A program made the position numbers and the translations under genes. A stretch of DNA of 64,000 nucleotides, from NCBI GenBank assembly GCA_002269645.1, contig NIVC01002215.1, forward strand, positions 1-64,000, given 5' to 3'. Shown here piece by piece: positions 678 to 64,000 of the stretch (positions are counted from its first letter, which is position 1; each line of letters opens with the position of its first letter). Under the pieces are notes generated by a model. That model was given only the letters and a program-made list of their open reading frames with translations. It was not told where the DNA came from and did not search any database. The DNA comes from Macrostomum lignano. Taxonomy: Eukaryota.

Positions 678-2128
678 AGATAAACCAAGGATTACTGCAC
701 TTGATAAACTAAGGATTATTGCACTTGATAAAACAATGATTACTGCGCTTGATAAACCAAGAAATATTGCACTTAATAAGCCAAGGATTACTGCACTTGT
801 GTGAAAAACTAAAAATTATTGCACTTGATAAACCAAGGATTACTGCACTCGATAAACCAAGGATTACTGCTCTTGATAAACCAAGAATTATTGCTCTTAT
901 TAAACCAAGGATTATTGCACTTGATAAGCCAAGGATTATTGCTCTTAATAAGCTAAGGATTATTGCACTTGGCAAACCAAGGATTACTGCGCTTGATAAA
1001 CCAAGGATTATTGCTCTTTATAAGCTAAGGATTACTGCACTCAATAAACCAAGGATTATTGCTCTTAATAAGCAGCTAAGGATTACTGCACTCGATAAAC
1101 CAAGAATTATTGCTCTTAATAAACCAAGGATTATTGCACTTGATAAGCCAAGAATTATTGCTTTTAATAAGCTACGGATTATTGCGCTTGATAAACCAAG
1201 GATTATTGCACTTGGCAAACCAAGGAATACCACTTGATAAACCAAGAATTATTGCTCTTAATAAACCAAGAATTATTGCACTTGATAAGCCAAGAATTAT
1301 TGCTCTTAATAAACCAAGGATTACTGTGCTTGATAAACCAAGGATTATTGCTCTTGATAAGCCAAGGATTACTGCACTTGATAAACCAAGAATTATTGCT
1401 CTTAATAAACCAAGGATTATTGCGCTTGATAAGCCAAGTATTACTGCACTTGATAAACCAAGGATATTGCTCTTAATAAGCTAAGGATTACTGCACTTGA
1501 TAAACCAAGGATTATTGCTCTTAATAAGCCAAGGATTATTCCTCTTAATAAACCAAGGATTATTGCACTCGATAAGCCAAGAATTATTGCTCTTAATAGG
1601 CCAAGGATTATTGCACTTGGCAAACCAAGGATTACTGCACTTGATAAACCAAGGATTATTGCTCTTAATAGGCCAAGGATTATTGCACTTGGCAAACCAA
1701 GGATTACTGCACTTGATAAACCAAGGATTATTGCTCTTGATAACCCAAGGATTACTGCGCTTGATAAACCAAGGATTATTGCTCTTAATAAGCTAAGGAT
1801 TACTGCGCTTGATAAGCCAAGGATTATTGCACTCAATAAACCAAGGATTATTGCTCTTAATAGGCCAAGGATTATTGCGCTTGATAAGCCTAGGATTACT
1901 ACACTTGATAAACCAAGGACTATTTCTCTTAATAAGCCAAAGATTATTGCTCTTAATAGGCCAAGGAATATAGCACTTGGCAAACCAAGGATTACTGCAC
2001 TCGATAAACCAAGGATTATTGCACTTGATAAACCAAGGATTACTGCACTTGATAAACCAAGGATTACTGCACTTGATAAACCAAAGATTACTGCACTTGA
2101 TAAACCAAGGATTACTGCACTTGATAAG
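678..2128. repeat. Minisatellite, 24-bp unit GATAAACCAAGGATTA(C/T)TGC(A/T)CTT, about 60 copies
   Basis: Direct tandem repetition is visible. It explains the ALDKPRII / SAIILGLL repeat ORFs. Confidence 0.97.
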
Positions 2129-7531: not shown

Positions 7532-7963
<432 letters not shown>

Positions 7964-14093: not shown

Positions 14094-14354
14094 CAAGGAT
14101 GACTTAAGTAGAAGGACGGGAAACCTCGTTTCTTAGAAAATTTTAGAAGGCAAGTTTTCCCGAAAAAATACACTACGGAGTACGGAGATAGGAAGTTTTC
14201 ATTTTTCAGCACAAAAATTGTTATTGCTTTTGATTTTTGTGCTGGAAAAATGAAAACTTCCTATCTCCGTAGCGTATTTTTAAGGGAAAACCTGCCTTCT
14301 GAAATTTTCTAAGAAACGAGGTTTCCCGTCCTTCTACTACTTAAGTCGTCCTTG
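14094..14354. mobile_element. Palindromic MITE (hAT or P superfamily), 261 bp
   Basis: Nearly the whole element is an inverted repeat with CAAGG...CCTTG termini and perfect 8-bp TSD CTCCAGTG (14086-14093, 14355-14362). Related sequence occurs at about 29105-29190 and 42391-43000. Confidence 0.9.
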
Positions 14355-15684: not shown

Positions 15685-18600
15685 TCACTTCTTCTTGGAC
15701 TTGCTGAGCGTGAAGCTCGTGCCGGACGCCAGGTTGTTCCGGTTGTCAGCCGCGGTCTTCCGGCGCTGGAATTCCGCAATCTCCTCGTCCAGGCCCTGCC
15801 GCTTCTCCTCCAGCTTGCGCTTCTCATCCGCGTGCTGCTTCTTGACTGCCTCGAACTTCGTCTGCAGGTCGCCCTCGGCTTTCTTCAGCTCCTGCTCCTT
15901 CTCCTTGACGCGCACTACGAACATCTGGCGCATCTCCTCCTCCTTGCGCTGCAGCTCCGCCTGCGGGATTGATGATGACCAGGTTAATTATTCAGGAATA
16001 AAGTGCACCAGACCAAACGGGCTGAATCATTGAATCTGTGGTGCAATCAGCTGACTGAACCATTGAATCTGTGGTGCAATCAGCTGACTGAACCATTGAA
16101 TCTGTGATGCAATCAGGTGACTGAACCATTGAATCTGTGATGCAATCAGCTGACTGAATCATTGAATCTGTGATGCAATCAGGTGACTGAACCATTGAAT
16201 CTGTGATGCAATCAGGTGACCGAATCATTGAATCTGTGATGCAATCAGCTGACTGAATCAGTCCTGAGGGAAATGATCAGCTGACTGAATCAGTCCTGAG
16301 CGAAATGATTAGCTGACTGAATCAGTCCTGAGGGAAATGATCAGCTGACTGAATCAGTCCTGAGGGAAATGATCAGCTGACTGAATCAGTCTTGAGGGAA
16401 ATGATCAGCTGACTGAATCAGTCCTGGGGGAAATGATCAGCTGACTGAATTAGTCCTGAGGGAAATGATCAGCTGACTGAATCAGTCCTGAGGGAAATGA
16501 TCAGCTGACTGAGTCACCCGGAGAGAAATGAGCAGTGGACTGAATCAGTCCTGAGGGAAATGACTCGTGGATCTTCATGCAAAGAGCTAACTTAAAGAGG
16601 AGAAACGGCACAAGAATAATATCCAATAAAAATATCCAGGTTGAGGTGAGCACCTGGTGGGTCTCCCGCCGTTTCTCGTACATCTCCTGCAGGCTGAGTT
16701 TATCCTCGTCGCTGAAGCCCATCTCGGCCAGGCGCTGCCTCCTGTAGTGCTCGTAGTGCATCGCGTGGGTTCGTTCGCGCAGGTCGTCCATGTTGACGCG
16801 GAGCATGGCCTCCCGCAGGCGGACGAAGTCGCAGTGGGCTTCGCTGTACACCAGGACGGCGCCCCACGGGTACTGGCGGGCGCGGCTCTTGCGCCCGTTC
16901 ACTGTGATCTCGTCTGAGCTGCCAACCACGGCGAAGGGCACCAGGTTCTGCGGGGGGGGGGAGGAGGTGATAATATAATCAACTAGCTTTGAGTCACAGT
17001 CACAGGCTTGTAAATCCTGTTGATAGGCCTGTTCACACGAGCTACTGTTTAAAGGAACGGCCTCGGATCAGCTGGGAGCAATCAGGGTTAGAGAATCAGG
17101 GTTTAGGTTAGGGGTGGGAGTTGGGGTTTAGGCCTAGGGTTTTAGGTTAGAGTAAGGAATTAGAGTTTCCTTACTGTGGGAATTAGAGAGGAATAGGTTA
17201 TGAGTATGGGAATTAGGGTTTAGGTGATTAGTGGCAGTCAAATTGCAGCAATTCAATTGTCGCAGACCCTGATCAGCTAGATTTATCCTTGAACAGGATT
17301 ACCGCTACTAGAAATTGGCTTCTGTCCCAATGAAAACTGAATGTCGAGAATTAAAAATCAACTTGATAATGGTTCAGCTAATTGACTTTTTTGCTAAGAA
17401 ATAAGAATCATATCTCTAAGGATGATCATTGATAATAAATCACATGCTCATAAAGCATGAACATTAGTAGTAGAATAGAAAATTAGCTCTCCAAGAGCTC
17501 CAAGAAACCCTATCTAAGGTCATAAGCGTAACTTCAAAGATTTCCCAATCGCTACAATTCCATACTGCTCAATTCCATAACTAATCTGCTTTGCATTCCG
17601 AGCCGGCCAGCCTGCGCCACTGTGCACATCTGGTGCAACTTCGCCGGCCCCACTCCGGGTATAAATAGGCACACCGACAGCCCCAGTGCCTGCTGGGATG
17701 ACCTTCGGTGGTCCGGGGTGCAGGCTTCAAACCTGTAGCCGACTAGCGTCGGAGTGGTTCGATTCCACCTTCTCAGCGGGGATTTTTGCTCAATAACCGT
17801 ATTATTTTATCCCATTTTGGCCGATCCTCACCTTCATAATTGAGTTCTGCTCGCTGACGGTCTCGTCATCGGTGGGGAACTGGTAGATGTGGATGTCGTT
17901 GTTGGCGATCTCATTCTGGATCTGGAAGAAATCGATCCAATTTTGGGATATTTGGCATCAAAAAAATAAAAAAATCGATTTTGGGAAGAAATTTGCATTT
18001 GAAAACCCGCAAGGTGAGCAAAGCCACCGAAAAACCGGTCAAGAGGAATAAAAATTTGCTTCACCACTACTGTTTACAGGTACAGTTGGAGTTTTATAGC
18101 TCAAGCTCGAGTAAAAACGGATAAAATATCTTTGCCGATATGTATCGAAAAGTAAGTTAGTAAAGCGGAAAAATACACTGTAGTAAAAAATTCGACCAAA
18201 AAGGAGAAATCGCGACTTACTCTTGTCTTGAAGCGCTGCAGCTCCGGCTTGGTAATTGTATCGGACTTGGCGATCACCGGAATGATGTTGACGCGACTGT
18301 CGAGCTTCTTCATTGTGACCATGTCGATCGACTTGAGTCTGAAAATGAAAATTAAGCCGTTTGCCAATTTATTGCAGATTCAGACCACAGATATAACTAG
18401 ATGGGCCACTCAGGCACATTTACTTAGTAAAACAGCTTTCTACTTTCAGTTCAGTAGCAAAGAAGAAAACATAAGCTATTTTATAAAAATAAAGGCAGCT
18501 GAAATGACTTTGATAAGTTTAGAAGCCCAAGCTTGCAGGCGTAAACAACTTGCTAATTGGTTCAGCAATAATGTACATTGGCCAGTTCACTGAAATGTAC

Positions 18601-23658: not shown

Positions 23659-23830
23659 CATACATGCGCAACCTTGGGAATCACCCGGCCGTTTCCATTG
23701 GCAACACACACATGTAAGTCGCTATTGGCTGAGAGCAGTCACGTGACCAATATTCTGTCCAATAGCGACTTACATGTGTGTGTCGCCAATAGAAACGGCC
23801 GGGTGAATCCCTAGTTTGCGCCCAAGCATG
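23659..23830. mobile_element. Palindromic ~170-bp MITE, copy 1
   Basis: Long internal inverted repeat (CACCCGGCCGTTTC...GAAACGGCCGGGTG), CAT...ATG termini and 8-bp TSD TCAAGAAT (23651-23658, 23831-23838). Confidence 0.8.
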
Positions 23831-26728: not shown

Positions 26729-26898
26729 TATACATGCACAACCTTGGGAATCACTCGGCCGTTTCTATTGGCAACACACACATGTAAGTCACTATTGGCT
26801 GAGAGCAGTCACATGACTACTATTCTGTCCAATAGCGACTTACATGTGTGTTGCCAATAGAAACGGCCAGGTGAATCCCTAGGTTGCGCCCAAGCATG
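26729..26898. mobile_element. Palindromic ~170-bp MITE, copy 2
   Basis: Highly similar to 23659-23830. 8-bp TSD TTTCTCCA / TCTCTCCA (one mismatch). Confidence 0.8.
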
Positions 26899-30193: not shown

Positions 30194-32668
30194 GAGGGTT
30201 TCACGAGAGATATTCAGACAGGGGCTCCCTAAAACACGCCCCGCACCGGGCCCCAAACCGCTACACATTATAACATTTTTTGTCAATGCAGTATTTGATT
30301 GCAAGGAAAAGTTAAAATAGTAATGGAATAAACATCTTTATTTATTTTTTTAAATATTATTTTTTTTATATTCTCGTTTTCATTATTAATTTATAATATT
30401 ATTATTTTATTAATATTATTATTAATATCACTTATTGTTCACCAAATTTTATATTTCAAAGTAAAAAAACTAAATTTAATAAAAACTTGAAGCTTAACAG
30501 AAAACGCATTCTGAAGTGTCTTTAGTTATAGTCCAATTTGTTTTAATGTGTAGCGCTGCAGGGCGGTGCGGGGCGTGTTTTAGGGAGACCCATTCAGACA
30601 GACATTCAAAATGATTGTCTGTAACTTCAAACAAAATTGACCCGTTTCAACCATCTTTTTGGCAAATACTTACGCAAGTGTTGGGCGTCGAATAAGCTTT
30701 AATTTATTAACTGAAGTAAAAATCCTTCTGACATACATTGATTTAAAAATTGCTTAGCAACACTAGCTCTGATTAGAAATCGCTTTACTGTTGACTAAAA
30801 TTGTTTTGATCGTAGCAGCCTAAAAGCAGATACTGGATTTAAAAATTCTTCGATTTACTCTATACGCATGTCTCAGCTTTAAAATGACACCTCAGGCGTC
30901 GCAAAAGACAGCTTTGATGCTGAGATATTCAACACTAAACATGCATTGCTTTGCGCAAACTCACATTCAGAAATTTCACTGATTTTTTGTCGATATTTGT
31001 GCAGTTGCCGTGTCCTTGTTTTTCATCAGAATCTCGTCAAATTCTAGTCATGTCTATAAGCATGTCTCAGCTTTAAAATGACACCTCAGGCGTCGCAAAA
31101 GACAGCTTTGATGCTGAGATATTCGACACTAAACATTGCTTTGCTCAAACTCACATTCGGAAACTTCACTGATTTTTATTCAATATTTGTTCAGATGCTT
31201 GTCTACTTTTCCATTTATTAACCATCGTATGGAGCCTTGCTAATGTACAAGTGTATATAGTTACTGTAAATGGGGGGTTTTGTGACTCACTTAAACTTGT
31301 TTACGCATTCTGCAGCTATTTGCCGCCTTTCATTGGAGTGATTCATGGAGTCCAGTTGATAAATTTCCGCAAATTGGACTGCTTCTACGTCAGATCTCAA
31401 CATTTAGAACCATCCTTGAACTATTTCAGAGTTAAGTGAGCTAATGGCATCAAATGGAAGGCTAGTGCTCGTACTCGTAAGCAAAGCAGGTTCACAATTG
31501 AAATGGTTGTATTCATGGCCATGGGATCTAAACTGATCTGTTTTACTTTCACGATTGCTTCGGTCTCAGAAGGAGCAGCAGTTGATGGACTGAGGTGAGA
31601 AGAAGATGTGTCACGACTTGAGCTGTTTTTAGAAAATATCTTTATCCAATTAAATATTTTCATGCGGCTCCTTAGGTTGTTCCGAATTCCGAGTCTAGAA
31701 GTCAAGACAGAAAAAAAGTTAAGAACTGCTACGGTAGTCCGTAGGGATTGGAAAGCTTAGCAGTACATTAGAAATCGCCTGTTCAATCTAAAAAGTTTGA
31801 AGTACATATAGCTATTGGGTTGCAACAACAGTAGAAAAAATTCTTCCTTTTTATTTTATTCCCACCGCTTACCTCATTCCAATTTGGATAGCAGAATTGC
31901 CACGCAAAAAAAGTAAAAACATAACAATAAACTATTTGCTTCATATTAATTGCCACTGACTGTTAATAAACGCGACGTCAATTTCTCTCAATAACAATTG
32001 GAACATGTTTCTTGTACACTCATATATTTATTTGAATTGCAAAGCGGTGAAAAAGTCATGATTGGTCGCCATATGTACAAATGTACACTCACAGACTCAC
32101 TGACTCAGGTACAATCTATGCAATATAAAGGCAGGAATCATTAAAAATCAAATACTTAAGACAGTTTAAGAGAAGTCCAGGTTTAAACTGGACATGACTA
32201 GAATTTGACAAGTTTCTGATGAAAAACAAGGACATGGCAGCTGCACAAATATCGACAAAAAATCAGTGAAATTTCTGAATGTGAGTTTGCACAAAGCAAT
32301 TGTTTAGTGTCGAATATCTCAGCATCAAAGCTGTCTTTTGCGACGCCTGAGGTGTCATTTTAAAGCTGAGACATGCGTATAGAGTAAATCGAAGCATTTT
32401 TAAATCCAGTATCTGCTTTTAGGCTGCTACAATCAAAACAATTTTAGTCAACAGTAAAGCGATTTCTAATCAGAGCTAGTGTTGCTAAGCAATTTTTAAA
32501 TCAATTTATGTCAGAAGGATTTTTACTTCAGTTAATAAATTAAAGCTTATTCGACGCCCAACACTTGCGTAAGTATTTGCCAAAAAGATGGTTGAAGCGG
32601 GTCAATTTTGTTTAAAGTTACAGACGATCGTTTCGAATGTCTGTCTGAATATCTCTCGTGAAACCCTC
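30194..32668. mobile_element. Long-TIR DNA transposon, Sola-like (third layer)
   Basis: About 470-bp highly similar terminal inverted repeats (30194-30219 joined to 30600-31055, versus about 32190-32668). GAG...CTC termini and 4-bp flanks ATAT/ACAT. No intact transposase. Confidence 0.75.
30220..30591. mobile_element. MITE inserted into the left TIR of the Sola-like element (innermost layer)
   Basis: TIRs GGGGCTCCCTAAAACACGCCCCGCACCG / CGGTGCGGGGCGTGTTTTAGGGAGACCC flanked by duplicated ATTCAGAC (30212-30219, 30592-30599). It is absent from the right TIR. Confidence 0.85.
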
Positions 32669-35600: not shown

Positions 35601-37002
35601 CAGATTAACTTTGCACTTTCATAGATTTGTGGCTGCGGTCCATCCTGATCACATTGCCGCGGTTCTCCAGGGCCGAAGGTCCAATCAATGGTTTCCGGGT
35701 TGCGGCGCGGGGACAACATCGGATTATTCCATTTCCAACATTTCCCTTCAGCCCGGGAAGAGCAGCAGCCCCAACAATCTCTTAATTGCAGGTTTAGTGC
35801 CAAGCTTAGCGCCTCGAAGCTGCCGCGGCAGTATCGATGAAGCTGGCAGGAGGCTGGACGCCCGTTCCGCCAGCCCTCCCAGCAGGACCGCCGGGCGGCA
35901 TGCGCCGGCCAAGATAAGACCCTGCACGCCAGAGCCTCATTTCCTCTCCTCTCTCCCCTGAGTAAGCCGACACAGGCCTACTTCATAGCGTTTTTTCAAT
36001 TCCCAGAAATCACCATCGCTGCGAGTCACCACCTTCTTATCTAATTGGTTCTGACATTTTCATTTGCAGCGCCTTCGAGCTGCTCGGTCTCCGGGCTGGC
36101 ATTGGATTGGCCCTGTCCTGACGCAAACCATGGCAAGCCCAGCCACCCATTGGCCGCCAGCCTGGTGCCACTTCCTCCCTGCTGGCCAGTCTGCCTGCCC
36201 TCCCACTGGGACGCCAGAGTGCGACATGGCGGTGCAGGCCTGCCAGGCGCACCCTGCGATAGGTGGGTGTAATTTAGCTTTAAGGGAAGCCCGGAACAGA
36301 AGGCTGCTGCACCTTCAACTCTTTCTTGAAGGAGTGGCCTCTCCGCCAATCTGGTTGAAGCGAAAACTTTATCGTTTTTTTACAGAAGCCGCAGAGATTC
36401 GACAACTCCCAGAAGGACAGCTGGCTGAGACGCAGGGCAGTTGAGAACTCCAAGGCGAGGCAAAAGAAGCAACAGGTAGCTCAGTTCCCTGAGCCGACAG
36501 CAGGCTCTCTCAGTGCGTCATTGACAAGTGAGTCCCCAGCAGGCAATAAAAACATTGCAGTACAACCGGAATTGAGCGCTTCAGAAAGGCGAAAAAATGA
36601 CCCACCGTCGACCTCCAGCTGGGAGTGAGGAGCTCTCCGGTTGTATAAACACGTGGGTCCCAGGACAGGGATGCACGATGACATGCTACCCCTTGCTTCC
36701 CCGTAGCAGCCCGCACGTCATTCCCAGGATTCCCTGGAAGCGGCTGCCCCAGGCTTCGAAGCGGCAGGAGATGCAATTCTAGCGGTGCACGCATGTAAAC
36801 AAGAGACTTGGGCGCTCGGTGCTGCTTCTGTCGGACTGCAAGGACAGATGGACATTGACAGACAGGCACTGGGCTGACAGGCAGGCTAGCAGGGCATGGC
36901 ATAGCACTCTCGATCACAATGGTTTTATACGCTCGTAAAATAGTAAAAGTAACCAAAGCGGGTAAAGTCATGTTCCGACTAATCCTCAAAAATCCGGCAG
37001 AT

Positions 37003-37594
37003 AGACACTGTCAGACACTGACAGACACTGACAGACACTGTCAGACACTGTCAGACACTGACAGACACTGACAGACACTGTCAGACACTGTCAGACACTG
37101 ACAGACACTGACAGACACTGACAGACACTGTCAGACACTGACAGACACTGACAGACACTGGCAGACACTGACAGACACTGAAAGACACTGACAGACACTG
37201 ACAGACACTGACAGGCACTGACAGACACTGACAGACACTGACAGACACTGACAGACACTGACAGACACTGACAGACACTGACAGACACTGACAGACACTG
37301 TCAGACACTGTCAGACACTGACAGACACTGACAGGCACTGACAGACACTGACAGACACTGACAGACACTGGCAGACACTGACAGACACTGTCAGACACTG
37401 ACAGACACTGTCAGACACTGACAGACACTGACAGACACTGGCAGACACTGACAGACACTGAAAGACACTGACAGACACTGACAGACACTGACAGGCACTG
37501 ACAGACACTGACAGACACTGACAGACACTGACAGACACTGACAGACACTGACAGACACTGACAGACACTGACAGATACTGACAGACACTGACAG
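37003..37594. repeat. Minisatellite, 10-bp unit (A/T)CAGACACTG, about 59 copies
   Basis: Direct tandem repetition. It explains the SVSVCQCL ORFs. Confidence 0.97.
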
Positions 37595-39060
37595 GCGGAC
37601 ACAGACTGGCGGACATGCAGCAGCTCATATCCTCCCATGCTCACTCACGCAACTGAGGATCTGGAGGCCACACCGCATCCCCAGGTAGCTCCTCGTATAT
37701 TACCAGTTCCAGAGAGAGAACTGTCCCCAGCAGACCGGTTCAGGCGAGACGCACAAGGGGATCCCCAGTTTCAAAAGATGCAATTTTCGTGCGCCGCCAG
37801 CCTTGAGTCACGTCTTGGGGCGGAAATGAATTTTTGGCGAACTCAAAAGTCTTGCTGCCCCGTCCGTCCCCACCCGGCCTGTTTGCTGGCCCCCACGGGC
37901 AACCGGAAATTTTACGGTCAAGTGGGATCTCTAAAAAATTGATCCCTTCAGCCTCCCGGCCCCGCGGCCTTCCCCGCTCCTCTTCGCTCCGATTCCCAGC
38001 CCGATTGTGTCACGCTTCCGCGAGCGCTCCGGGGCCCTGCGCGAATTCCCACACCCGAGCTGCGGCGGCGACCCCTTGGCCCCTCCGCTCCCAGTGGGTG
38101 GCCAGAAACTCCGAGGATCAATAATTCGCCCCTCGGTGGGAGTTCCTTCCTTAGACCCCCTTAAAATGGGTTTCCGGAATGTCCTGTGCAGATTGAAGTT
38201 CGAAGCTGCTCCACCGGTCATCCCTCTCACTCGCTCTGCTCCCCGCCCTCGCCGTCCGCTCTGTTTGCTCTGCCTCTTGTATCCGTTCTCTGATCCCCGC
38301 CCCCTCAGACAGCCTCAGCTGCTCGGCGCCATCACTCCGGCGCGGGCATTGTTGAATCAGCCCTGCCAGGCCGAAGTCCGCCAGACGGGCCGCCCCCCCC
38401 CCCACCCAGCCCAAGCGGGTGGCGGCGGAAAGTCCGAGATGGCAGCCGGGCTTTATGGGAATCGTGCGGCATGAATTCTGGCGCTGAAATGCCACATGCG
38501 GAGCCTTCATGCTGCTGGCATTCTTCTGGGGATAAAATAATTCTTCCGGGCAGGAACTGAGAGACCAAATACCCCAAGGATCCGGGAGGGGTGACAGCGG
38601 TGGAGAGGGACTGCGTCGCTACGTGATGAATGGCGGGCTGGCCTCGCATTGAAGCCGCCATCGGCGCATGACCCGCCAGCCGTGGCTGCCAAATTGACCA
38701 CCCCTTCCCCGAGCTTCATCGCAAGCTGCGGGATTGTCTGGCGGCTGCGTGCCACATTGCGGGACTCCCGCCGTTGCTGCTGATTGATGCAGCTGAGAGT
38801 CTGAACTTCAAACTTCTTCACTCCTCGCATTTGTTCATTAAAGTGCGCAACTCGCAAGTGTGTTTATGAGCGGCCATCTGCCTCCCCGTGTGCTGCAATC
38901 TCTCTCACGTGCACACAGGTGTTTGGCAACCCAGCCTATCATCATGGGGTGGAAATTGCCAATCTCTAATTTGTTAATTTTAATATGAGCAGGCATTGCT
39001 TACTAGCTTGGGATTTTTCGGCAGGGTTGTCCGACACTCTCGGACACGCAATTTAAGCTC

Positions 39061-39465: not shown

Positions 39466-40060
39466 TAATGGCGCTTATGTCTCTTAGTTGGATGAACGTC
39501 GTAGCGGCAAAAATCCAATTTAAACAACGGAAGCTGGATGATGCAGCCAGATTAGGATGAAGCAATGCAAAGTGACACGCGAAGCAACTGCAGGGAAAAA
39601 GATCCCGTCGCCAAGCAGCGTAGTGAGTTGGATTCCTGCTCACTGGGGAGAAGTCTATGACATTTTCCCGCTGCATTTTTTCCCAAAGCTCTTCGAACTC
39701 GAACTGAGTCACTTCTAGAAATTTTATTTCGTCTTTCTCTGCTCAACCGGCCCACGCGGAAATCTCTAAATCCCGGGATGGCGAGCAGCTGGAATGGGGA
39801 AGAAAATTGAAAGGGGAAAGCGCGATGGCGAAGCGCTGGTCGCAGTTCTCGGAGCAATCGGGAATAAAGAGGCTTTTGACCAAAGCGCGCGTACGCAAGC
39901 GTAAAAATCTATATAACTAAATATTTTACTAATGTTTCGAGTTGGCGCGGATCGCTAGGAAACTTTTCTCGAGCTTCAGAGGCGAAAATTTCATGATTGA
40001 GAAATCTGGAGTATGCGATGGCTGCATTTGGTTTATCGACGATAAACATTGGCTATAGCC

Positions 40061-40888
40061 TATGGGCATTTGGTTTATAGTCTATGTGCATTGGTTTATA
40101 GTTTATGTGCATTGGTTCATAGTCTATGGGCATTGGTTTATAGTTTATGTGCATTGGTTTATAGTCTATGGGCATTGGTTTATAGTTTATGTGCATTGGT
40201 TTATAGTCTATGTGCATTGGTTCATAGTTTATGTGCATTGGTTCATAGTTTATGTGCATTGGTTTATAGTTTATGTGCATTGGTTTATAGTCTATGTGCA
40301 TTGGTTCATAGTTTATGTGCATTGGTTCATAGTTTATGTGCATTGGTTTATAGTTTATGTGCATTGGTTTATAGTCTATGGGCATTGGTTTATGGTTTAT
40401 GTGCATTGGTTTATAGTCTATGTGCATTGGTTTATAGTTTATGTGCATTGGTTCATAGTTTATGTGCATTGGTTTATAGTCTATGGGCATTTGGTTTATA
40501 GTCTATGGGCATTGGTTTATAGTCTATGGGCATAGGTTTATAGTCTATGGGCATTGGTTTATAGTCTATGGGCATAGGTTTATAGTCTATGGGCATAGGT
40601 TTATAGTCTATGGGCATTGGTTTATAGTCTATGGGCATAGGTTTATAGTCTATGGGCATAGGTTTATAGTCTATGGGCATTGGTTTATAGTCTATGGGCA
40701 TTGGTTTATAGTCTATGGGCATAGGTTTATAGTCTATGGGCATAGGTTTATAGTCTATGGGCATTGGTTTATAGTCTATGTGCATTGGTTTATAGTCTAT
40801 GGGCATTGGTTTATAGTCTATGTGCATTGGTTTATAGTCTATGGGCATAGGTTTATAGTCTATGGGCATTGGTTTATAGTCTATGGGC
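40061..40888. repeat. Minisatellite, 21-bp unit GGTTTATAGT(C/T)TATG(T/G)GCATT, about 39 copies
   Basis: Direct tandem repetition. It explains the VYSLCAL / MPIDYKP ORFs and ends about 100 bp before the first PCBP acceptor. Confidence 0.97.
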
Positions 40889-40987
40889 AAATTGCTTTAG
40901 GGTGCTTTGAGCACATTGGTTTGGTAGTTTTGGTTTAAAGAAGGCTGCATTCGATTCCCTACACCCGGTGTGCTGCGCAACCCACAG

Positions 40988-50293
<9,306 letters not shown>

Positions 50294-52261: not shown

Positions 52262-52432
52262 ACATGTTGCCAAAATTCTATGCTTGAACTTTGCTTGCTT
52301 GCCGGTCTCTGGTAGCATTTCATGAAAAATTGCTTCATAAACTTTTGCTTGCACTTTAGAAAAGCACCTGTTTGCTTCATTTGGGGTTTAGAAGTCAAGA
52401 TATTGGAACTTTGACGCCAAAATGGATCTCAG

Positions 52433-52866
52433 TATCATCAGTACCATCAGTACTATCAGTACTATCAGTACTATCAGTATCATCCGTATCATCAGTATCA
52501 TCAGTATCATCACTATCATCAGTATCATCAGTACCATCAGTACTATCAGTACTATCAGTACTATCAGTACTATCAGTACTATCAGTACTATCAGTACTAT
52601 CAGTACTATCAGTACTATCAGTATCATCAGTATCATCAGTATCATCAGTATCATCAGTACTATCATCAGTATCATCAGTATCACCAGTATCATCAGTATC
52701 ATCAGTATCATCAGTATCATCAGTACTATCATCAGTATCATCAGTATCATCAGTATCACCAGTATCATCAGTATCATCAGTATCATCAGTACTATCATCA
52801 GTATCACCAGTATCATCAGTATCACCAGTATCATCAGTATCATCAGTATCATCACTATCATCAGTA
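52433..52866. repeat. 9-bp tandem repeat ATCAGTA(T/C)(C/T), about 45 copies
   Basis: Direct tandem repetition. It explains the SVSSVL / ISTISI ORFs. Confidence 0.97.
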
Positions 52867-53073
52867 TTCAGCTATTCTATGTTGCTCAGTGCTCATATTT
52901 ATCATGACTGAGCTGCTCTCAGAGCAGGAAGTATAAAAAATAAAAGTAAAGCGAATTAAGCAAAGTTTTGCTTCAGAGAAGCCAGCTCAACCATGCAAGC
53001 ACAAGCAGCCCGGATAATTGGCACTCTCTTTTATTGCACTCTACGGTGTACATGTACACCAGGTTCGAGTGAG

Positions 53074-53854
53074 TTACTCGAAGTTGGCTTTCAGGAAGCT
53101 CAGATTGTCGTACACGTTGCCGTAGATGGCCTGGTTGTTGCTGAAGTCGCCGCCGGACACGACACCGACCTGGCGGGGCTGGCCGCTCACGGTGATGAAC
53201 AGCGGGCCACCGCTGTCACCGTAGTACGGGCTGTTCGGGCTCATCGACTGGCAGACGGCGCCGATGAAGCGCCTGCAGCTCTCCACGGTGCTGGTCGCGT
53301 ACTTCAGCACGCCGGACCGCCTGTTCTCGTCCTGGCCGTAGCCAGCGATGGTGACGCTCTGGCCGACAGAGGTGGCGGCTTCGTGCAGAACGATCGGCTT
53401 GATCAAGTCGGTGAACTCGATATCAGCGGTGGTCTTCACAATGGCGATGTCGTCCCTGAGCAGTTTTGGGATTATTTTTGTGGCCTTTGAGTGCAGTAAT
53501 TGGTACTCTCTTGGAAGCTAGAATCTTAAACTGTACTCACTTGCCAACCGTGTTGCACTGCGTGTACTTCGGGTTGATGACCTGGCGGCTGGTGTCCAGG
53601 CTGTACCTCTTGGAGCCGGACTCGGGCCGGTTGCCCTGCACGGCGCCGAACAGAACAGAAGTCGGGCGAGTGCGGCACACGCAGTGGCCGGCGGTGAGGA
53701 CGGTGCGGCTGTCCAGGATGGAGGCTGAGCAGAAGCCGAGCCAGCCGGCGAACGGGAACTGGCCCTGTTCGGCGGTCTGGCCGTACAGGACGTACGGGTC
53801 GGGCATGGCCGAGGCTACGCCGAGGGCGCAGGCGACAATGATCAGCTTCAGCAT
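53074..53854 (-). CDS. Secreted S1 (chymotrypsin-fold) serine protease, cercarial-elastase-like, copy 1 (231 aa)
   Basis: Exons 53854-53541 and 53455-53074 (85-nt GT-AG intron, phase 2). Signal peptide MLKLIIVACALGVASA and catalytic triad LTAGHC / DDIAIV / GDSGGP. AATAAA at about 53036-53031 on the - strand. Confidence 0.95.
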
Positions 53855-54387
53855 GGCCTAAACGTGTGGTTTCAATGAATGGCTTCGATTTTTGGGCCGA
53901 ATATATAGTTAAGATCGGATGGGAGTTCAGCATGTGCTACCAGCTCTGGTCTGCTTATCGCTTCAGCTGTCCGTTGCAGAGCCCCTTGCCGTATGTGGAG
54001 TCGAGGCAAAGCACAGAGAACGTGACTCTGCGGACAAATGGAGCTAGGCGCTCATGCTGGCAGGCGTTGGAAGCGTGGCAGCGTGGGCGAAGCGATCGGA
54101 GTGGTGCTGGGACTTTGGCCCGCGTAGCGCAAGCTGACTGCAATGGTGGAAAGCTTTCAAAAGTCACGGACTGCTGGGTTACTGTCGACACTGTAGAGTC
54201 CACGCCAGTAGCAGCAGGGGAGTAACAGTTTCTTAACCCTATTAATATGTGATTATGCTGTATGCCACATTGAAACCATCAGTTCAAAACAGGAAAATAT
54301 TTGGATTTCTTCCCGATTTAGCGCGTTGATTGGCGGATCTTCTTGCATTGGGTTTCGCGTCGCAAAAATAGTGGTCTTTTGTGCGTC

Positions 54388-54830
54388 CATATGATGCTAG
54401 TGGTCCTTTGTTCGCTTCATATGATGCTAGTGGTCCTTTGTTCGCTTCATATGATGCTAGTGGTCCTTTGTTCGCTTCATATGATGCTAGTGGTCCTTTG
54501 TTCGCTTCATATGATGCTAGTGGTCCTTTGTTCGCTTCATATGATGCTAGTGGTCCTTTGTTCGCTTCATATGATGCTAGTGGTCCTTTGTTCGCTTCAT
54601 ATGATACTGGTGGTCCTTTGTTCGCTTCATATGATGCTAGTGGTCCTTTGTTCGCTTCATATGATACTGGTGGTCCTTTGTGCGTCCATATGATGCTAGT
54701 GGTCCTTTCATATAATACTACATCATTTCATATGGTCATGGGGTCATTTCATATCATACTGGTGGTCCTTTGTTCGCTTCTTTATGATACTGGTGGTCCT
54801 CTGTGCGCTCCATATGATACTTGTGGTCCT
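54388..54830. repeat. Minisatellite, 30-bp unit CATATGATGCTAGTGGTCCTTTGTTCGCTT, ~10 clean copies then degenerate
   Basis: Direct tandem repetition. It explains the ASYDASGPLF ORF. Confidence 0.95.
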
Positions 54831-55319
54831 TTGTACTCTCTCCACCGCTTGCATTGGCATCTGGATTCGCTGGCATTGCTACCAGTGATGCTGCTGCTGT
54901 TGCTGACAAGAAGAAAAAAGAAGCAAAGGCCGGTCGCATCCGTGCACAGGGCGCGAACGGGGTTGCATACCCAAACATATGAGTGCACATGGAGCACCCC
55001 CTATGCACGGTATCGAACGCTCCCGAGCTGAGTGCTCCCACCTGGAGAATGGCTGAAGAAGTTATTCCTCACCCCAGCAGCAGCGCATCAGTCTGTGACC
55101 AGCAGCCCCGTCACAGGTAGCAGGCATAGTCTCGGACGACGCCTTTTCGTGGTATTCCCGGATTCGCACGGAACCCGGCCCGTTGCGTACCAACGTGTCC
55201 TTATCTTTGACGTCTACCTCGCCCAGCACGCATGTTTTATCGTCGCTCTATATCTCCTGCTTCTGCTCCTGCCTACGTGCACCTCTACTCGTGCGCGTCT
55301 GCTCAACGATGGTGACATC

Positions 55320-59131: not shown

Positions 59132-59926
59132 TCAGCCCATGAGCCCGCGGATGAAGCTCAGATTGTCGTACACGTTGCCGTAGATGGCCTGGTTGTTGGT
59201 GAAGTCGCCGCCGGACACGACACCGACTTGGCGGGGCTGGCTGCTCACGGTGACGAACAGCGGGCCACCGCTGTCACCGTAGTACGGGCTGTTCGGGCTC
59301 ATCGACTGGCAGACGGCACCAGTGAAACGCCTGCAGGCAGCCACGGTGTTACTGGCGTACTTCAGTACGCCGGACCGCCTGTTCTCGTCCTGGCCGTAGC
59401 CAGCGATGGTGATGCTCTGGCCGACGGAGGTGGCGGATGTGTGCAAAGTGATTGCGCCGATGACAGAATTGAAGGAGATCGCCGTGGTGGTCTTCAGGAT
59501 GGCGATGTCGTCCCTGTGGGTCAGAGGTATTTTGCCAATGAGTTTTTATCTAGTGATAACACCTAAAGCGGCAGAACTAACCAGCAAAACAGCGTCTGTG
59601 TGGAGTACTCACTTGCCAATGGTGCCGCAGCTAGTGTAGCGTGGATGAATGACCTGCCGGCTGGTGTCCAGACTGTACCTCCGGGAGCCCGACTCCGGGT
59701 TGTTGCCCTGCACTGCGCCGAACAGAACGGAGGTCGGCTTGGAGCGGCACACGCAGTGACCGGCGGTGAGGACGGTGCGGCTGTCCAGGATGGAGGCGGA
59801 GCAGGAACCGAGCCACGCGGCGAACGGAAACTGGCCCTGACTGGCAGTCCTACCGTACAGGACGTACGGGTCAGGCATGGCCGACGCCAGGCCGAGGGCG
59901 CAGGCGACAATGAGCAGCTTCAGCAT
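59132..59926 (-). CDS. Secreted S1 serine protease, cercarial-elastase-like, copy 2 (231 aa)
   Basis: Exons 59926-59613 and 59513-59132 (99-nt GT-AG intron at the same position and phase as copy 1). Signal peptide and intact H/D/S triad. About 82% identical to copy 1 by manual alignment (42 differences in 231 aa). AATAAA at about 59098-59090 on the - strand. Confidence 0.95.
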
Positions 59927-61700: not shown

Positions 61701-61811
61701 CGGGCAAGCGCTGGGTCCGGACGAGGTGCCATTGCGCATAGCGCATACAGCATTGCGCATACATTGTGTGGCCAGTGACTTATAAAATAAAGACCCTGAC
61801 TGTGTATTTTG

Positions 61812-61851
61812 TCGTTGTTGTTGTTGTTTTTGCTGCTGCTGCTGCTTCGTG

Positions 61852-61897
<46 letters not shown>

Positions 61898-62146
61898 GAC
61901 TGCGGACCGAGCTTGAAATAACCGGACCAGGTGCCAAACCCCTACCGCTGACAGAGCCAGCGACAAAGGCTAAGCACAGAGGGCCGGACCGAGCCACACT
62001 CACCGCCCCTGAGCCAGGAGCGGTGACCGATTCCCGGCGCTCTTCGCCGCCCGAAGAAAGGGCGTTGCCTCCCCCCCGCGACAAAGACGCGGCGCCGGAT
62101 AGGGCCTGCTGGTTACCCAGCAGGCTGGGAGTAAATCCCAGGGGGT
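61812..62146 (-). mobile_element. Short non-autonomous retroelement (SINE/SIDE-like): ~250-nt GC-rich structured body plus (CAA)n tail
   Basis: Body 62146-61899 with several strong hairpins, and a (CAA/CAG)n tail at 61898-61812. No ORF. A (CAA)n run also lies immediately 5' of it. Confidence 0.7.
62034..62146 (-). ncRNA. HDV-like self-cleaving ribozyme (predicted)
   Basis: On the - strand: P1 ACCCCCU (62146-62140) with GGGGGGG (62077-62071); P2 CCGGCGCC (62098-62091) with G[A]GCGCCGG (62042-62034); P3 GCG/CGC closing L3 UCUUUGU; P1.1 C-G and U-A; J1.1/4 GCAAC; P4 CGCCC/GGGCG; J4/2 G-C-G-A-A with putative catalytic C at 62046; GUAA-capped 8-bp hairpin in J1/2. Confidence 0.7.
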
Positions 62147-62440
62147 GTTGTTGTTGTTGTTGCTGTTGTTGTTGCTGCAGCTGCTGTTGTGTGTGTTGCG
62201 TGTGTGCCTAGCAATTCCGAGAAGCTACTAGTGACTTCCATTCAAGCGGATCATCCTCCAGAAATTAAACACGTTCTCAGGTCTCCTGCAAAAATCTCGC
62301 ATCTCATGCAGGTCCAGCTTCTCCTGAAGGCTGCGCGTGGCGGGGCACTCCATGACATGCTCCAACGTCTCGGCACCATCCCTCCTCTTGCCTACCAATG
62401 CGCTTCCTGAACTCCGCCAGATTAAAAGGGTGGCCACTCC
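62147..62440 (-). mobile_element. 5'-truncated LINE 3' end with (CAA)n tail
   Basis: GHPFNLAEFRKRIGRQEEGWCR, then a frameshift, then ETLEHVMECPA...PENVFNFWR*. This is the CCHC-knuckle C-terminus typical of I/R1-group ORF2, followed by a CAA/CAG-rich tail (about 62190-62146). Confidence 0.65.
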
Positions 62441-62494
62441 TGCTGTTGCTGTTGTTGATGCTTTTTGTTAGTCTAGGAAAACTGAGTCAAGTCA

Positions 62495-62757
62495 TGTTTG
62501 CAAGCGAAGGAGAATACAATTGAAAGATCTCTACCGAAGTGACGAAAGTATTTATTTGACTACATAACACGAAACCACGTACATTAGTAGACAAACGCCA
62601 TCCGATTGGCTGGGGGTTAAAACCATGCACACTGGCGAGCACAAATGTACACAGGTAGGGGTAAAACGATAGCGCGCAAGAATTATCAGTCACGGGAGAG
62701 AGAGAGAGAGAGAGAGACAAGTGAAACAACATGAAAAACCAAAGTACAACCCCAACA
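62495..62757 (-). mobile_element. 3' LTR of gypsy element (263 bp)
   Basis: Starts TGTTG directly after the polypurine tract GGGGGAAGCAG (62768-62758), contains AATAAA (about 62556-62551) and a (TC)n run, and ends ...AAACA. Confidence 0.75.
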
Positions 62758-62810
62758 CTGCTTCCCCCAAAAGCAGCAAAACAAAAAACAAAAGAAACCA
62801 AGACCTGTCC

Positions 62811-64000
62811 TTAGACCTTATAACAAACAGGTTTACGAGGCCGCAAATCATACGAGCTTTGGGGCTGGAGAGTCTCATCTCCAGAACTCAGCGGGGAGTC
62901 ACAGTCAGTCACCTCAGGTTCACGCAGCTCCGAGTCAGAGCCAGCCTTGGCACCCTGAATCGATAGCCCAGCCTGATCCTCGGATCCAGCCGCCTCGGTC
63001 AGCCGCCGATCGGCCTCCGCCTCCGGGCGGCAGCTCCATTGGTTTGCGTGCGCCATCCGCAGTCCACCGTCTGGTAGGTCAGCTGAGGTCACCAGAGCTG
63101 TGTTCCGGCCGTGCTGCACGATGAACTTGGCCGGAACCGGAGCCGTGCCAGGCCGTGCCGGCGTCCCCACATGAGAATGTCCGGCGAGCTGGAACGATTC
63201 CCGCTAGGCCTGCTGGTGCGAATGGTTAGGAGCAATTTCTGCAGGAACTGGTCAAATGGGACCACTTTCGTCCACGTCTTCAGCCCGCCTTTGAGACTCC
63301 TCGCCAACCGCTCAGCCTGCCCGTTCGATGCCGGATGGTACGGTGGGGTGTGCATCTCCTGGCAGCCGACACTGTTCAGCCACTGCGAGACTCTTTCCGA
63401 CCTGAACTCGGGCGCATTATCCGACACTAGCGTCCGAGGCACTCCATTTCTGGCGAACACCGCTCTCAGCACTCTCAGCACACTGCCCGCAGACCTGTCT
63501 GGGACCTGGACAGCTTCTGGCCAACCCGAGTATGCATCAGACAGCAACAGTAGCAAGCCCACTCCTGGCACCTCACAGTGGTCCATGTGGACCCGGGACC
63601 ACGGCTCGCTCTCGGATGGCCAGATGTCAATTTTCCGCTGAACCACCGGCCGTCTTTCAGCGCACAGCTGACACCGCTCAACAAACTGACGGACATCGCG
63701 ATCCAGTCCAGGCCACCAGAACTCCTTAGACACATGGGCCTTCGTATTTTCCGCGCTCGGGTGCACCTCATCATGCGCGGTCTCCACAATGCGCCGCCGG
63801 AGAATGGTCGGAGGCACCACCCTGGTACCGTGGATGACCAGCCCGTTCTCCACAGACAACGCTTCCCGACACGCTTTGTACGGCCGCTCCAGCTGAGAGA
63901 CCTGACCCCACCGGCCTGTCCTGATTCTCTGCTGGAGTCTTTGAAGCAGTGAACACCGGGAAGTACTTTCTCTCAGCTCCTCCACGGTAACCAAGCCTCC
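62811..64000 (-). mobile_element. Ty3/gypsy pol 3' part (integrase); runs off the window end
   Basis: HHCC finger (AHDEVHP...CQLC), D-D-E core (VHMDH, LVSDNAPEF, SNGQAER) and FWWPGL motif. A frameshift after LMWGRR leads to the C-terminal tail ending YDLRPRKPVCYKV* at 62811. Confidence 0.93.

What the first reader, a model, noticed from the sequence alone, without database searches (positions are those of the whole stretch)
62034..62146. HDV-like self-cleaving ribozyme forming the 5' end of a short (CAA)n-tailed retroelement
Seen on the - strand: ACCCCCU-GGGAUUUACUCCCAG-CCUGCUGG-GUAA-CCAGCAGG-CCCUAU-CCGGCGCC-GCG-UCUUUGU-CGC-GGGGGGG-AG-GCAAC-GCCC-UUUCUUC-GGGC-GG-CGAA-GAGCGCCGG. All elements of the nested double pseudoknot occur in the right order: P1, P2, a 3-bp P3, a 7-nt L3 with the U...G pair, P1.1, GCAAC, P4 and GCGAA with the catalytic C (62046). 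P1.1 has U-A in place of the usual C-G, which looks like a compensatory change. The predicted cut site coincides with the 5' boundary of the element. Known: HDV-like ribozymes process the 5' ends of R2, RTE and other non-LTR elements and of their short derivatives. Inference: this is a ribozyme-headed, ORF-less SINE/SIDE family that needs no Pol III promoter. Deviations are an A-G pair at the cleavage site (usually G-U or G-C) and a bulged A in P2, so this copy may be slow or dead.
Basis: partly seen in the sequence, partly recalled or inferred. Interest (0 to 1): 0.85.

Follow-up and report, generated by a model that had tools for sequence, protein, structure and literature searches.

The report
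HDV-like ribozyme heading a short (CAA)n-flanked unit
A 113-base stretch has every sequence and pairing feature of a hepatitis-delta-type self-cutting RNA and heads a 250-base non-coding unit bracketed by CAA repeats; this is a new example of a known way retrotransposons trim their own RNA, but only one copy could be found.

Summary
It fits the HDV-like nested double pseudoknot. The only Rfam match is an HDV family model, RF02682 (30.2 bits, below its gathering score of 44; E 2.7e-4 for the 141 nt tested, 0.12 window-wide). A strict descriptor built from published dimensions hits once in the window, twice in 1000 window shuffles, and never in 20000 local shuffles.

The third, an A-G pair at the cut site, disappears if P1 slides by one base on the G7 strand. 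That gives a C62145-G62071 pair, as in the active L1Tc ribozyme.

The ribozyme starts where a (CAA)n tract ends. It is followed by 136 nt of strongly structured, ORF-less RNA and a perfect (CAA)15. The flanks are collinear, like a target-site duplication.

No second copy was found in the window or in any searchable collection. Covariation, family status and mobility are therefore untested. The neighbouring "LINE tail" ORF has no database support.

Verdict: a convincing in-silico HDV-like ribozyme and a new member of a known kind. The SINE/SIDE reading is plausible but unproven.

The parts
62140..62146 (-). P1 5' strand. Register c uses C62145..U62140 (6 pairs, C62145-G62071 at the cut site, cut between A62146 and C62145).
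   Evidence: duplex with G7 -12.3 kcal/mol, against -4.2 for the alternative CCUAUCC chosen by the Rfam model
62099..62139 (-). J1/2 insert of 41 nt: hairpin GGGA-UUUAC-UCCC (62139-62127), hairpin CCUGCUGG-GUAA-CCAGCAGG (62124-62105), and linker CCCUAU (62104-62099).
   Evidence: -5.1 and -16.4 kcal/mol. Structured J1/2 domains are known to activate large HDV-like ribozymes (PMC4908430).
62091..62098 (-). P2 5' strand: CCGGCGC, 7 Watson-Crick pairs with 62040-62034. C62091 is optional.
   Evidence: -15.1 kcal/mol
62078..62090 (-). P3 (GCG/CGC) enclosing L3 UCUUUGU. U62087 and G62082 are the conserved U...G. C62086 and U62085 form P1.1.
   Evidence: L3 matches the RF02682 consensus UCUaCGU and the R2 UCCUCGU quoted in PMC5035012 at 5 of 7 positions each.
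62071..62077 (-). P1 3' strand (P1'), a run of seven G
62064..62070 (-). P1.1 3' strand AG (62070-62069), then J1.1/4 GCAAC
   Evidence: identical to the RF02682 consensus AGGCAAC
62049..62063 (-). P4 hairpin GCCC-UUUCUUC-GGGC
   Evidence: -6.9 kcal/mol
62041..62048 (-). J4/2 GGCGAAGA, with the putative catalytic C at 62046
   Evidence: The RF02682 consensus is GGCUAAGA, so the GA is part of J4/2, not a bulge.
62034..62040 (-). P2 3' strand GCGCCGG
61898..62033 (-). 136-nt ORF-less body of the unit. It is strongly structured: a 12-bp hairpin 62026-62000 and a long hairpin around 61975-61935.
   Evidence: MFE -67.6, z -4.4; no meaningful ORF
61853..61897 (-). Perfect (CAA)15 tail-like tract
62147..62206 (-). 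Upstream CA-rich complex microsatellite ending (CAA)4C. Positions 62192-62151 are collinear with 61852-61809.
61809..61852 (-). Downstream complex CAG/CAA tract, 38 of 44 collinear with 62192-62151. It is either a TSD-like duplicate or a shared tail module.
   Evidence: score 54; 4-15 of 2000 triplet-block shuffles reach it
62228..62437 (-). 69-aa ORF remnant ending ...ETLEHVMECP...GSH*, 81 nt upstream of the ribozyme. It is possibly the C-terminus of an APE-type LINE ORF (context; identity unproven).
   Evidence: no homologue found

Best explanation
The stretch 62146/62145 to 62034 on the - strand encodes an HDV-like self-cleaving ribozyme. It has a 6-7 bp P1, a structured 41-nt J1/2 insert, a 7-bp P2, a 3-bp P3 with L3 UCUUUGU, a 2-bp P1.1, GCAAC, P4, and GGCGAAGA carrying the catalytic C62046.

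When the locus is transcribed from any upstream promoter, the ribozyme folds as it is made. P1, the J1/2 hairpins and P3 form before the 3' half appears. It then cuts at the first base of P1, just after the upstream (CAA)n tract. This releases a roughly 250-nt structured, non-coding RNA with a 5'-OH that ends in (CAA)n.

The most likely origin is a non-autonomous or internally deleted derivative (SIDE/NARTc-like) of a (CAA)n-tailed non-LTR retrotransposon. It would have been inserted by target-primed reverse transcription into a CAA/CAG microsatellite.

Shown: the sequence, the pairings, the statistics and the position. Inferred: catalysis, retrotransposition and the existence of a family.
For: Sequence and pairings:
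- The sequence is exact.
- The only Rfam match at the site is an HDV family, RF02682: 30.2 bits, E 2.7e-4 for the prespecified 141 nt. It shares L3 U-C-U-x-x-G-U, AG, GCAAC and GGC-x-AAGA.
- Features the model does not score are also present: P2 with 7 Watson-Crick pairs, P1.1 in register, and a P1 of -12.3 kcal/mol.

Statistics:
- The strict descriptor gives 1 hit in the window, 2 in 1000 window shuffles, and 0 in 20000 local shuffles.

Literature precedents:
- The dimensions match published ranges for retrotransposon ribozymes: P1 6-7 bp, P2 at least 5 bp, and P1-to-P1' separations of 23 to over 700 nt (PMC3774820).
- Structured J1/2 domains activate large HDV-like ribozymes (PMC4908430).
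- L1TcRz has an experimentally mapped C1 at the cleavage site, and its paper places G37 in the G-C-rich P1 helix (PMC3185411).

The unit:
- The cut site falls at the (CAA)n/unique boundary.
- The body is structured (z -4.4) and ORF-less, with no RT/APE domain for 2 kb downstream and no tRNA-like head.
- A perfect (CAA)15 follows.
- The flanks are collinear, 38 of 44.

Known analogues:
- Ribozyme-headed short derivatives exist: R2 SIDEs (PMC3414825) and NARTc (PMC3185411).
- A microsatellite-targeting LINE, Dong, has an active 5' HDV-like ribozyme (PMC3774820).
Against: - The Rfam score is below the gathering threshold (30.2 against 44). No other HDV-like model (RF00094, drz-Agam, CPEB3) matches at this site with E up to 10.
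- P1' is a homopolymer, so pairing with any pyrimidine run is cheap and the cut site is uncertain by 1-2 nt.
- A nested non-ribozyme fold that sequesters L3, P1' and J4/2 is about 9 kcal/mol more stable by nearest-neighbour energies (-66.4 against about -57).
- Only one copy was found, so there is no covariation and no evidence of a family or of mobility.
- The last 60 nt before the tail do not resemble the 3' UTR of the adjacent ORF remnant.
- That remnant has no detectable homologue.
- The flank collinearity involves low-complexity DNA.
Confidence: 0.6

Rival explanations
1. The ribozyme is real but this is a one-off remnant, not a mobile short family. One route is that the 5' end of a full-length (CAA)n-tailed LINE lost its body by genomic deletion. 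Another is that reverse transcription primed on an internal CAA tract of the 5' UTR.
For: Only a single copy was found anywhere searched. The 3' end of the unit is not shared with the neighbouring LINE-like 3' UTR. A 10-mer, GCUCGGUCCG, recurs at 61994 and 61912 and could mark a microhomology-mediated rearrangement.
Against: The perfect (CAA)15 with collinear flanks looks like a complete insertion with its own tail. The whole 136-nt body is tightly structured, as expected of a selected RNA rather than a random deletion product. The source genome itself could not be searched, so failing to find copies is weak evidence.
Confidence: 0.25
2. Tail-to-head processing. The element family inserts into its own (CAA)n tails. 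One ribozyme then defines both the 5' end of the downstream unit and a 3' end of the upstream unit that stops exactly in the (CAA)n tail. This reading does not exclude the best explanation.
For: The ribozyme starts directly after a (CAA)n tract that follows an ORF remnant and a short 3' UTR. HDV-type ribozymes need no specific upstream sequence, and the cut is at the first base of P1 (PMC4908430).
Against: This is a single junction only. The upstream ORF is not demonstrably a LINE. A 2',3'-cyclic phosphate end has no known role in priming reverse transcription.
Confidence: 0.1
3. It is not a ribozyme. It is a GC-rich cluster of hairpins (the nested minimum-free-energy fold) that mimics the HDV layout by chance.
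For: The nested fold is more stable (-66.4 kcal/mol, z -4.45). The Rfam score is below threshold. The loose descriptor hits 0.33 times per shuffled window. The strict descriptor was written after seeing the candidate.
Against: The strict descriptor gives 0 hits in 20000 local shuffles. The core strands AG-GCAAC and GGC-N-AAGA match an HDV family consensus, and the L3 U...G and P1.1 are in exact register. The position at a repeat/unique boundary is unexplained by chance.
Confidence: 0.07
4. It is a host-domesticated ribozyme (CPEB3-like) acting on a cellular transcript, for example upstream of the trypsin-like gene whose ATG lies at 59926 on the same strand.
For: It is on the same strand and about 2 kb upstream of a protease gene.
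Against: It is embedded in repeats and next to an LTR element. Nothing indicates conservation.
Confidence: 0.03

Closest known systems
R2 SIDEs (short internally deleted elements) of Drosophila (PMC3414825)
   Same: A 5' HDV-like ribozyme is joined directly to a short 3' end. The element has no ORF and would depend on an autonomous partner and on read-through transcription.
   Different: SIDEs sit in 28S rDNA and demonstrably share the R2 or R1 3' UTR. Here the flanks are CAA microsatellites, no partner is identified, and only one copy is seen.
L1Tc / NARTc with the L1TcRz ribozyme, Trypanosoma cruzi (PMC3185411, PMC4035085)
   Same: An HDV-like ribozyme occupies the first nucleotides of both an autonomous LINE and its short non-autonomous derivative. 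The L1TcRz cut was mapped to C1, as in register c here.
   Different: L1TcRz is a compact 77-nt ribozyme that doubles as a promoter (Pr77). Those elements are poly(A)-tailed. Here there is a 41-nt structured J1/2 insert and a (CAA)n tail.
Dong and R4 ribozymes (R4 clade; PMC3774820)
   Same: An active HDV-like ribozyme cuts at the element's 5' end (PMC3774820). From my own knowledge, not from that paper, Dong lives in a trinucleotide microsatellite, (TAA)n.
   Different: Dong is an autonomous element with a restriction-like endonuclease. The neighbouring ORF remnant here has its ET..H....C motif about 45 aa from the stop, which suggests an APE-type LINE. The clade was not determined.
drz-Agam-2 ribozymes with a structured J1/2 (P1.2) domain (PMC4908430)
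   Same: A large HDV-like ribozyme whose P1 and P2 are bridged by stable helices.
   Different: Agam-2 has a 12-bp P2 and one P1.2 helix. Here P2 is 7-8 bp, J1/2 carries two hairpins, and a 6-nt linker leads to P2, an arrangement that was slower in the Agam-2 constructs.
Rfam RF02682 (HDV-like ribozyme of Faecalibacterium prausnitzii)
   Same: It is the best covariance-model match. It shares L3 UCU..GU, the P1.1 AG, GCAAC, and GGC-N-AAGA.
   Different: It is a bacterial, compact ribozyme. The score of 30.2 is below its gathering score of 44, and the P1 5' strand is not where the model expects it.
Perere-3 with 5' twister-variant ribozymes, Schistosoma mansoni (PMC8501958)
   Same: A LINE with a 5' self-cleaving ribozyme, short-repeat 3' tails, (GTAA)n, and TSDs abutting the cut site.
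   Different: A different ribozyme class. The TSD supplies the P1 strand there, whereas here P1 (CCCCCU) is element sequence.

Membership tests
HDV-like self-cleaving ribozyme | Nested double pseudoknot with P1, P2, P3, P1.1 and P4 in the canonical order (PMC4908430) | tested here: met
   all helices are present in order. It is the only such core on either strand of the window.
HDV-like self-cleaving ribozyme | P1 of 6-7 bp whose first base is the cut site; P2 of about 7 bp (at least 5); P3 of 3 bp (PMC4908430, PMC3774820) | tested here: met
   P1 has 5 C-G pairs plus U-G (6 contiguous), P2 has 7 Watson-Crick pairs, and P3 is GCG/CGC. The P1 register is ambiguous over 3 positions because P1' is G7.
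HDV-like self-cleaving ribozyme | L3 with the conserved U and G (reverse wobble), and a 2-bp P1.1 to the bases following P1' | tested here: met
   L3 is UCUUUGU. C62086-G62069 and U62085-A62070 pair in exact register. The RF02682 consensus has the same U-A.
HDV-like self-cleaving ribozyme | Catalytic C in J4/2 | tested here: met
   C62046 lies in GGCGAAGA and aligns to the C of the consensus GGCUAAGA. Its catalytic role was not tested.
HDV-like self-cleaving ribozyme | Score at or above the curated Rfam gathering threshold of an HDV-like model | tested here: not met
   RF02682 scores 30.2 bits against 44. No other HDV-like model matches at this site with E up to 10. The shortfall is at least partly explained by the unmodelled 41-nt J1/2 insert and by pseudoknot pairs the model ignores.
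HDV-like self-cleaving ribozyme | Covariation supporting the helices among homologues | not testable with these tools
   No homologue was retrieved. The source genome is not in the searchable collections.
HDV-like self-cleaving ribozyme | Mg2+-dependent self-scission giving 5'-OH and 2',3'-cyclic phosphate ends | not testable with these tools
   This needs an experiment.
Ribozyme-headed non-autonomous non-LTR element (SIDE / NARTc type) | Ribozyme at the exact 5' junction, and no ORF | tested here: met
   the cut site is at the (CAA)n/unique boundary. There is no ORF or RT/APE domain in the unit or in the 2 kb downstream.
Ribozyme-headed non-autonomous non-LTR element (SIDE / NARTc type) | 3' end shared with an autonomous partner LINE | tested here: inconclusive
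   there is no similarity between the unit's last 60 nt and the 3' UTR of the adjacent ORF remnant. Only the CAA/CAG tail module is shared. The remnant itself has no database homologue.
Ribozyme-headed non-autonomous non-LTR element (SIDE / NARTc type) | Multiple dispersed copies with insertion hallmarks (TSDs, variable 5' junctions) | tested here: inconclusive
   There is one copy in 64 kb and none in the metagenome, prokaryote-genome, viral or protein collections. The host genome was not searchable. The flanks are collinear, 38 of 44, p about 0.002-0.008 against triplet shuffles.
Pol III SINE | tRNA-, 7SL- or 5S-derived head with an internal promoter | tested here: not met
   no tRNA, 7SL or 5S match in or near the unit.

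The most novel reading that the evidence does not exclude
The unit belongs to a family that targets its own (CAA)n tails and builds tail-to-head arrays. In such arrays a single HDV-like ribozyme per junction delimits both neighbours on a read-through transcript. It creates the 5' end of the downstream unit and also a 3' end of the upstream unit that stops exactly in the (CAA)n tract used to prime reverse transcription. The family would then need neither its own promoter nor its own terminator.
Probability: 0.1. Interest if true: 0.6.

Novelty: new member of a known kind. Interest (0 to 1): 0.35.

Why it matters
HDV-like ribozymes are already known to process the 5' ends of R2, R4/Dong, RTE, Baggins and L1Tc elements and of their short derivatives. 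A further example does not change the picture. It would add a lineage with a microsatellite (CAA)n tail and a two-hairpin J1/2 domain, in a genome that may be a flatworm or another lophotrochozoan. That guess rests only on an identical H3.3-like protein. If a family exists, its copies would give a natural covariation set for a large HDV-like ribozyme. They would also allow a test of how microsatellite-tailed LINEs mobilise promoter-less passengers.

Tried and rejected
1. Rfam at gathering thresholds found no HDV hit. The evidence comes only from E-value mode.
2. My first, loose descriptor turned out to be uninformative, with 0.33 chance hits per window. I replaced it with a strict one.
3. The alternative P1 strands have internal mismatches or weak energy (-4.2 and -7.7 against -12.3 kcal/mol) and were rejected. 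These were CCUAUCC, the Rfam model's choice, and UACUCCC in the first hairpin loop.
4. Searching for other copies found nothing:
   - Repeat finder, pattern search and blastn within the window.
   - Protein search with a translation of the unit.
   - A core DNA pattern in metagenome, prokaryote-genome and viral collections. The hits were only chance matches inside bacterial contigs, in numbers expected for 18-20 specified bases.
   - Exact-ORF look-ups.
5. Identifying the neighbouring ORF as a LINE tail found no real homologue. I tried the word-indexed search, full HMMER on 1.84 billion representatives (only repetitive spurious hits), Pfam and PDB.
6. Reaching the source genome through the integrase and the H3.3-like gene failed. 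The best integrase identity was 59-77% on short contigs. H3 DNA was only 73-78% identical to flatworm genomes. The fetched loci hold no copy.
7. A full-length LINE body downstream of the (CAA)15 was looked for and not found.
8. The literature searches run here turned up no (CAA)n-tailed ribozyme element.

Full report
**Observation**

All its segment coordinates are right, including the proposed catalytic C at 62046 (sequence).

The pairings exist:
- P2 has seven Watson-Crick pairs, 62098-62092 with 62040-62034.
- P3 is GCG/CGC around the 7-nt loop UCUUUGU.
- P4 is GCCC/GGGC.
- The run of seven G (62077-62071) pairs with CCCCCU (62145-62140).
- The two bases after the G run (A62070, G62069) pair with U62085 and C62086. 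Those are L3 positions 3 and 2, the canonical register of P1.1.
- Between P1 and P2 lie two stable hairpins, -5.1 and -16.4 kcal/mol.

**Is it more than chance?**

Rfam at gathering thresholds reports only a tRNA-Sec elsewhere in the window. In E-value mode, the one ribozyme family that matches the locus is RF02682, the HDV-like ribozyme of F. prausnitzii. It scores 30.2 bits against a gathering score of 44. The E-value is 2.7e-4 for the 141 nt in question, 1.3e-3 for 701 nt, and 0.12 for the whole window against all 4227 families.

The model aligns P3, L3, P3', P1', AG, GCAAC, P4 and GGC-N-AAGA with high posterior probability. It puts the P1 5' strand on CCUAUCC, because it cannot model a 41-nt J1/2 insert. 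That alternative is weak, -4.2 kcal/mol against -12.3 for CCCCCU.

A loose topology descriptor of my own was uninformative, with 0.33 hits per dinucleotide-shuffled window. A strict one used dimensions from the literature: P1 of at least 6 contiguous pairs, P2 of 7 Watson-Crick pairs, P3 of 3, L3 U...G, P1.1 in register, CNRA, and a P4. It hit once in the window, twice in 1000 window shuffles, and never in 20000 shuffles of the GC-rich 249-nt unit. The strict descriptor was written after seeing the candidate, so it is supporting evidence and not a blind test. The Rfam hit at a prespecified place is the independent evidence.

1. P1' is a homopolymer, so three P1 registers are possible.
   - Sliding by one base (CCCCCUG) gives a C62145-G62071 pair at the cut site and moves the mismatch to the far end of P1.
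   - About a quarter of R2 ribozymes have mismatches at the top of P1 (PMC3774820).
   - The cleavage product of the active L1Tc ribozyme starts at C1, and its paper places G37 in the G-C-rich P1 helix (PMC3185411).
   - In this register the cut falls between A62146 and C62145, leaving ...(CAA)4CA entirely upstream.
2. The 'U-A instead of C-G' in P1.1 is also in the RF02682 consensus, which has L3 UCUaCGU followed by AG.
3. The 'bulged A in P2' is unnecessary. The RF02682 J4/2 consensus is GGCUAAGA. GGCGAAGA here is therefore J4/2, and P2 is a clean 7-bp helix.
4. L3 matches the UCCUCGU of R2Dm and zebra-finch R2 at 5 of 7 positions (PMC5035012).

Structured J1/2 domains are a known feature of large HDV-like ribozymes and can accelerate them (PMC4908430). 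R2 ribozymes have P1-to-P1' separations from 23 to over 700 nt (PMC3774820).

**A caveat on folding**

The nested minimum-free-energy fold (-66.4 kcal/mol, z -4.45) pairs L3, P3' and P1' with the 3' half of P4 and J4/2. By nearest-neighbour sums it is about 9 kcal/mol more stable than the ribozyme helices together, which come to about -57. Co-transcriptional folding should favour the ribozyme, because P1, P3 and P4 are local or form first. Even so, this copy could misfold, and activity has to be measured.

**Surroundings, reading the - strand 5' to 3'**

- 63994-63089: a Ty3/gypsy-type integrase ORF (Pfam Integrase_H2C2 and rve).
- About 62830-62468: the probable 3' LTR of that element.
- 62467-62438: a short A-rich and CAA/CAG tract.
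- 62437-62228: a 69-aa ORF remnant, ...GAETLEHVMECPATRSLQEKL...GSH*.
- 62227-62207: 21 nt of unique sequence.
- 62206-62147: a CA-rich complex microsatellite ending (CAA)4C.
- 62146-62034: the ribozyme.
- 62033-61898: 136 nt of strongly structured RNA (-67.6 kcal/mol, z -4.4).
- 61897-61853: a perfect (CAA)15.
- 61852-61809: a second complex CAG/CAA tract, followed by unique sequence.

The 249-nt unit has no meaningful ORF. The 2 kb downstream has no long ORF and no RT/APE domain. There is no tRNA-like, 7SL or 5S head.

The tract upstream of the ribozyme (62192-62151) and the tract after the perfect tail (61852-61809) are collinear at 38 of 44 positions. Only 4-15 of 2000 triplet-block shuffles reach that score. 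This could be a long, somewhat decayed target-site duplication around [unit + (CAA)15]. It could also be a tail module shared with the upstream remnant. Low-complexity DNA makes either reading tentative.

**The neighbouring ORF**

Its ET..H....CP motif lies about 45 residues before the stop, and the residues after it look to me like the C-terminus of APE-type LINE ORFs. That is recollection, not a test. The tests I could run found nothing:
- no word-sharing candidate among 5.8 billion proteins;
- only repetitive spurious hits in a full HMMER scan of 1.84 billion representatives;
- no Pfam family;
- no PDB relative.

The unit's last 60 nt do not resemble this remnant's 3' UTR.

**Search for relatives**

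- No second copy is in the window.
- A translation of the unit finds nothing.
- A 20-base core pattern finds one metagenome contig. It is a bacterial CRISPR contig, and the match overlaps the end of a coding region, so it is a chance match.
- An 18-base version finds 8 bacterial contigs and no viral ones. By my rough estimate that is about what 18 specified bases would give by chance in 596 Gb, and none of the hits has the rest of the motif.
- Exact-ORF look-ups fail.
- The window's H3.3-like protein is identical to that of Schistosoma and Hymenolepis, going by my recollection of what the returned accessions are. The DNA is only 73-78% identical.
- The best integrase relatives are 59-77% identical and sit on short contigs. 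The loci fetched through them hold no copy.

Covariation, copy number and insertion polymorphism could not be tested.

**Mechanism proposed**

1. Read-through transcription from any upstream promoter produces an RNA in which the ribozyme folds co-transcriptionally.
2. The ribozyme cuts at the first base of P1, immediately after the upstream (CAA)n.
3. The released RNA has a 5'-OH. It consists of the ribozyme, a structured 136-nt body and a (CAA)n tail.
4. A LINE reverse transcriptase could use that RNA to prime on a nicked (TTG)n/(CAA)n target.

This is the scheme shown experimentally for R2 and its SIDEs, for L1Tc/NARTc, and for R4 and Dong (PMC3774820, PMC3414825, PMC3185411). Perere-3 follows it with a different ribozyme (PMC8501958). 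Here the fold, the position and the tail are shown. Catalysis, mobilisation and family status are inferred.

**Verdict**

The ribozyme assignment is well supported in silico, at about 0.85. The reading as the head of a short non-autonomous (CAA)n-tailed retroelement is the best available but rests on one copy, giving about 0.6 for the whole statement.

The main rival is a one-off deletion or internal-priming remnant of a full-length element. The thing is a new member of a known kind and of moderate interest. Interest would rise if a family exists, or if the tail-to-head junction turns out to process both neighbours.

Noticed in passing
window 17692-17777 (+): A selenocysteine tRNA gene. Rfam RF01852 scores 78.4 bits, well above its gathering score.
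   Followed up: no
window 7532-7942 (-): An intronless H3.3-like histone gene. Its protein is identical to that of Schistosoma and Hymenolepis genomes (going by my recollection of the accessions), but the DNA is only 73-78% identical. This hints that the window comes from a flatworm or another lophotrochozoan that is absent from the collections.
   Followed up: partly
window 62468-64000 (-): The 3' part of a Ty3/gypsy-type LTR retrotransposon. The integrase ORF is at 63089-63994 (Integrase_H2C2 and rve). The probable 3' LTR, TG...CA, lies at about 62830-62468 and abuts the CAA/CAG tract. The ORF remnant at 62228-62437 could have been truncated by this insertion rather than by 5' truncation.
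   Followed up: partly
window 53095-53933 and 59132-59926 (-): Two copies of a trypsin-like (S1) serine protease gene about 6 kb apart. The DNA repeats are 83-92% identical, and the ORFs carry a signal peptide, the AGHC and GDSGGP motifs.
   Followed up: no
window 14103-14338, 23666-23821, 26736-26889: Short inverted-repeat (MITE-like) hairpins. They give sub-threshold hits to miRNA precursor models (MIR2599, MIR851, mir-249). They are most likely transposon hairpins rather than miRNA genes.
   Followed up: no
window 30585-32657: A large inverted repeat with 357-nt arms, 97% complementary and 1.36 kb apart, plus further nested arms. It could be a foldback element or a DNA transposon.
   Followed up: no
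window 665-2000, 36873-37750, 39907-40900, 47854-48600, 52389-52900, 54298-54840: An unusually dense set of minisatellite arrays with periods of 24, 10, 21, 9/22, 9 and 30 nt.
   Followed up: no
window 62034-62098 (-): A competing nested fold pairs L3, P3' and P1' with the 3' half of P4 and J4/2 (10 + 9 bp). It is about 9 kcal/mol more stable than the summed ribozyme helices and could be an inactive conformer or a switch.
   Followed up: partly
window 62086-62078 and 61968-61960; 61994-61985 and 61912-61903 (-): There are short internal repeats inside the unit. CUUUGUCGC occurs in L3/P3' and again in the downstream long hairpin. GCUCGGUCCG occurs twice. Their significance is unknown, and the 9-mer could be chance.
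   Followed up: no
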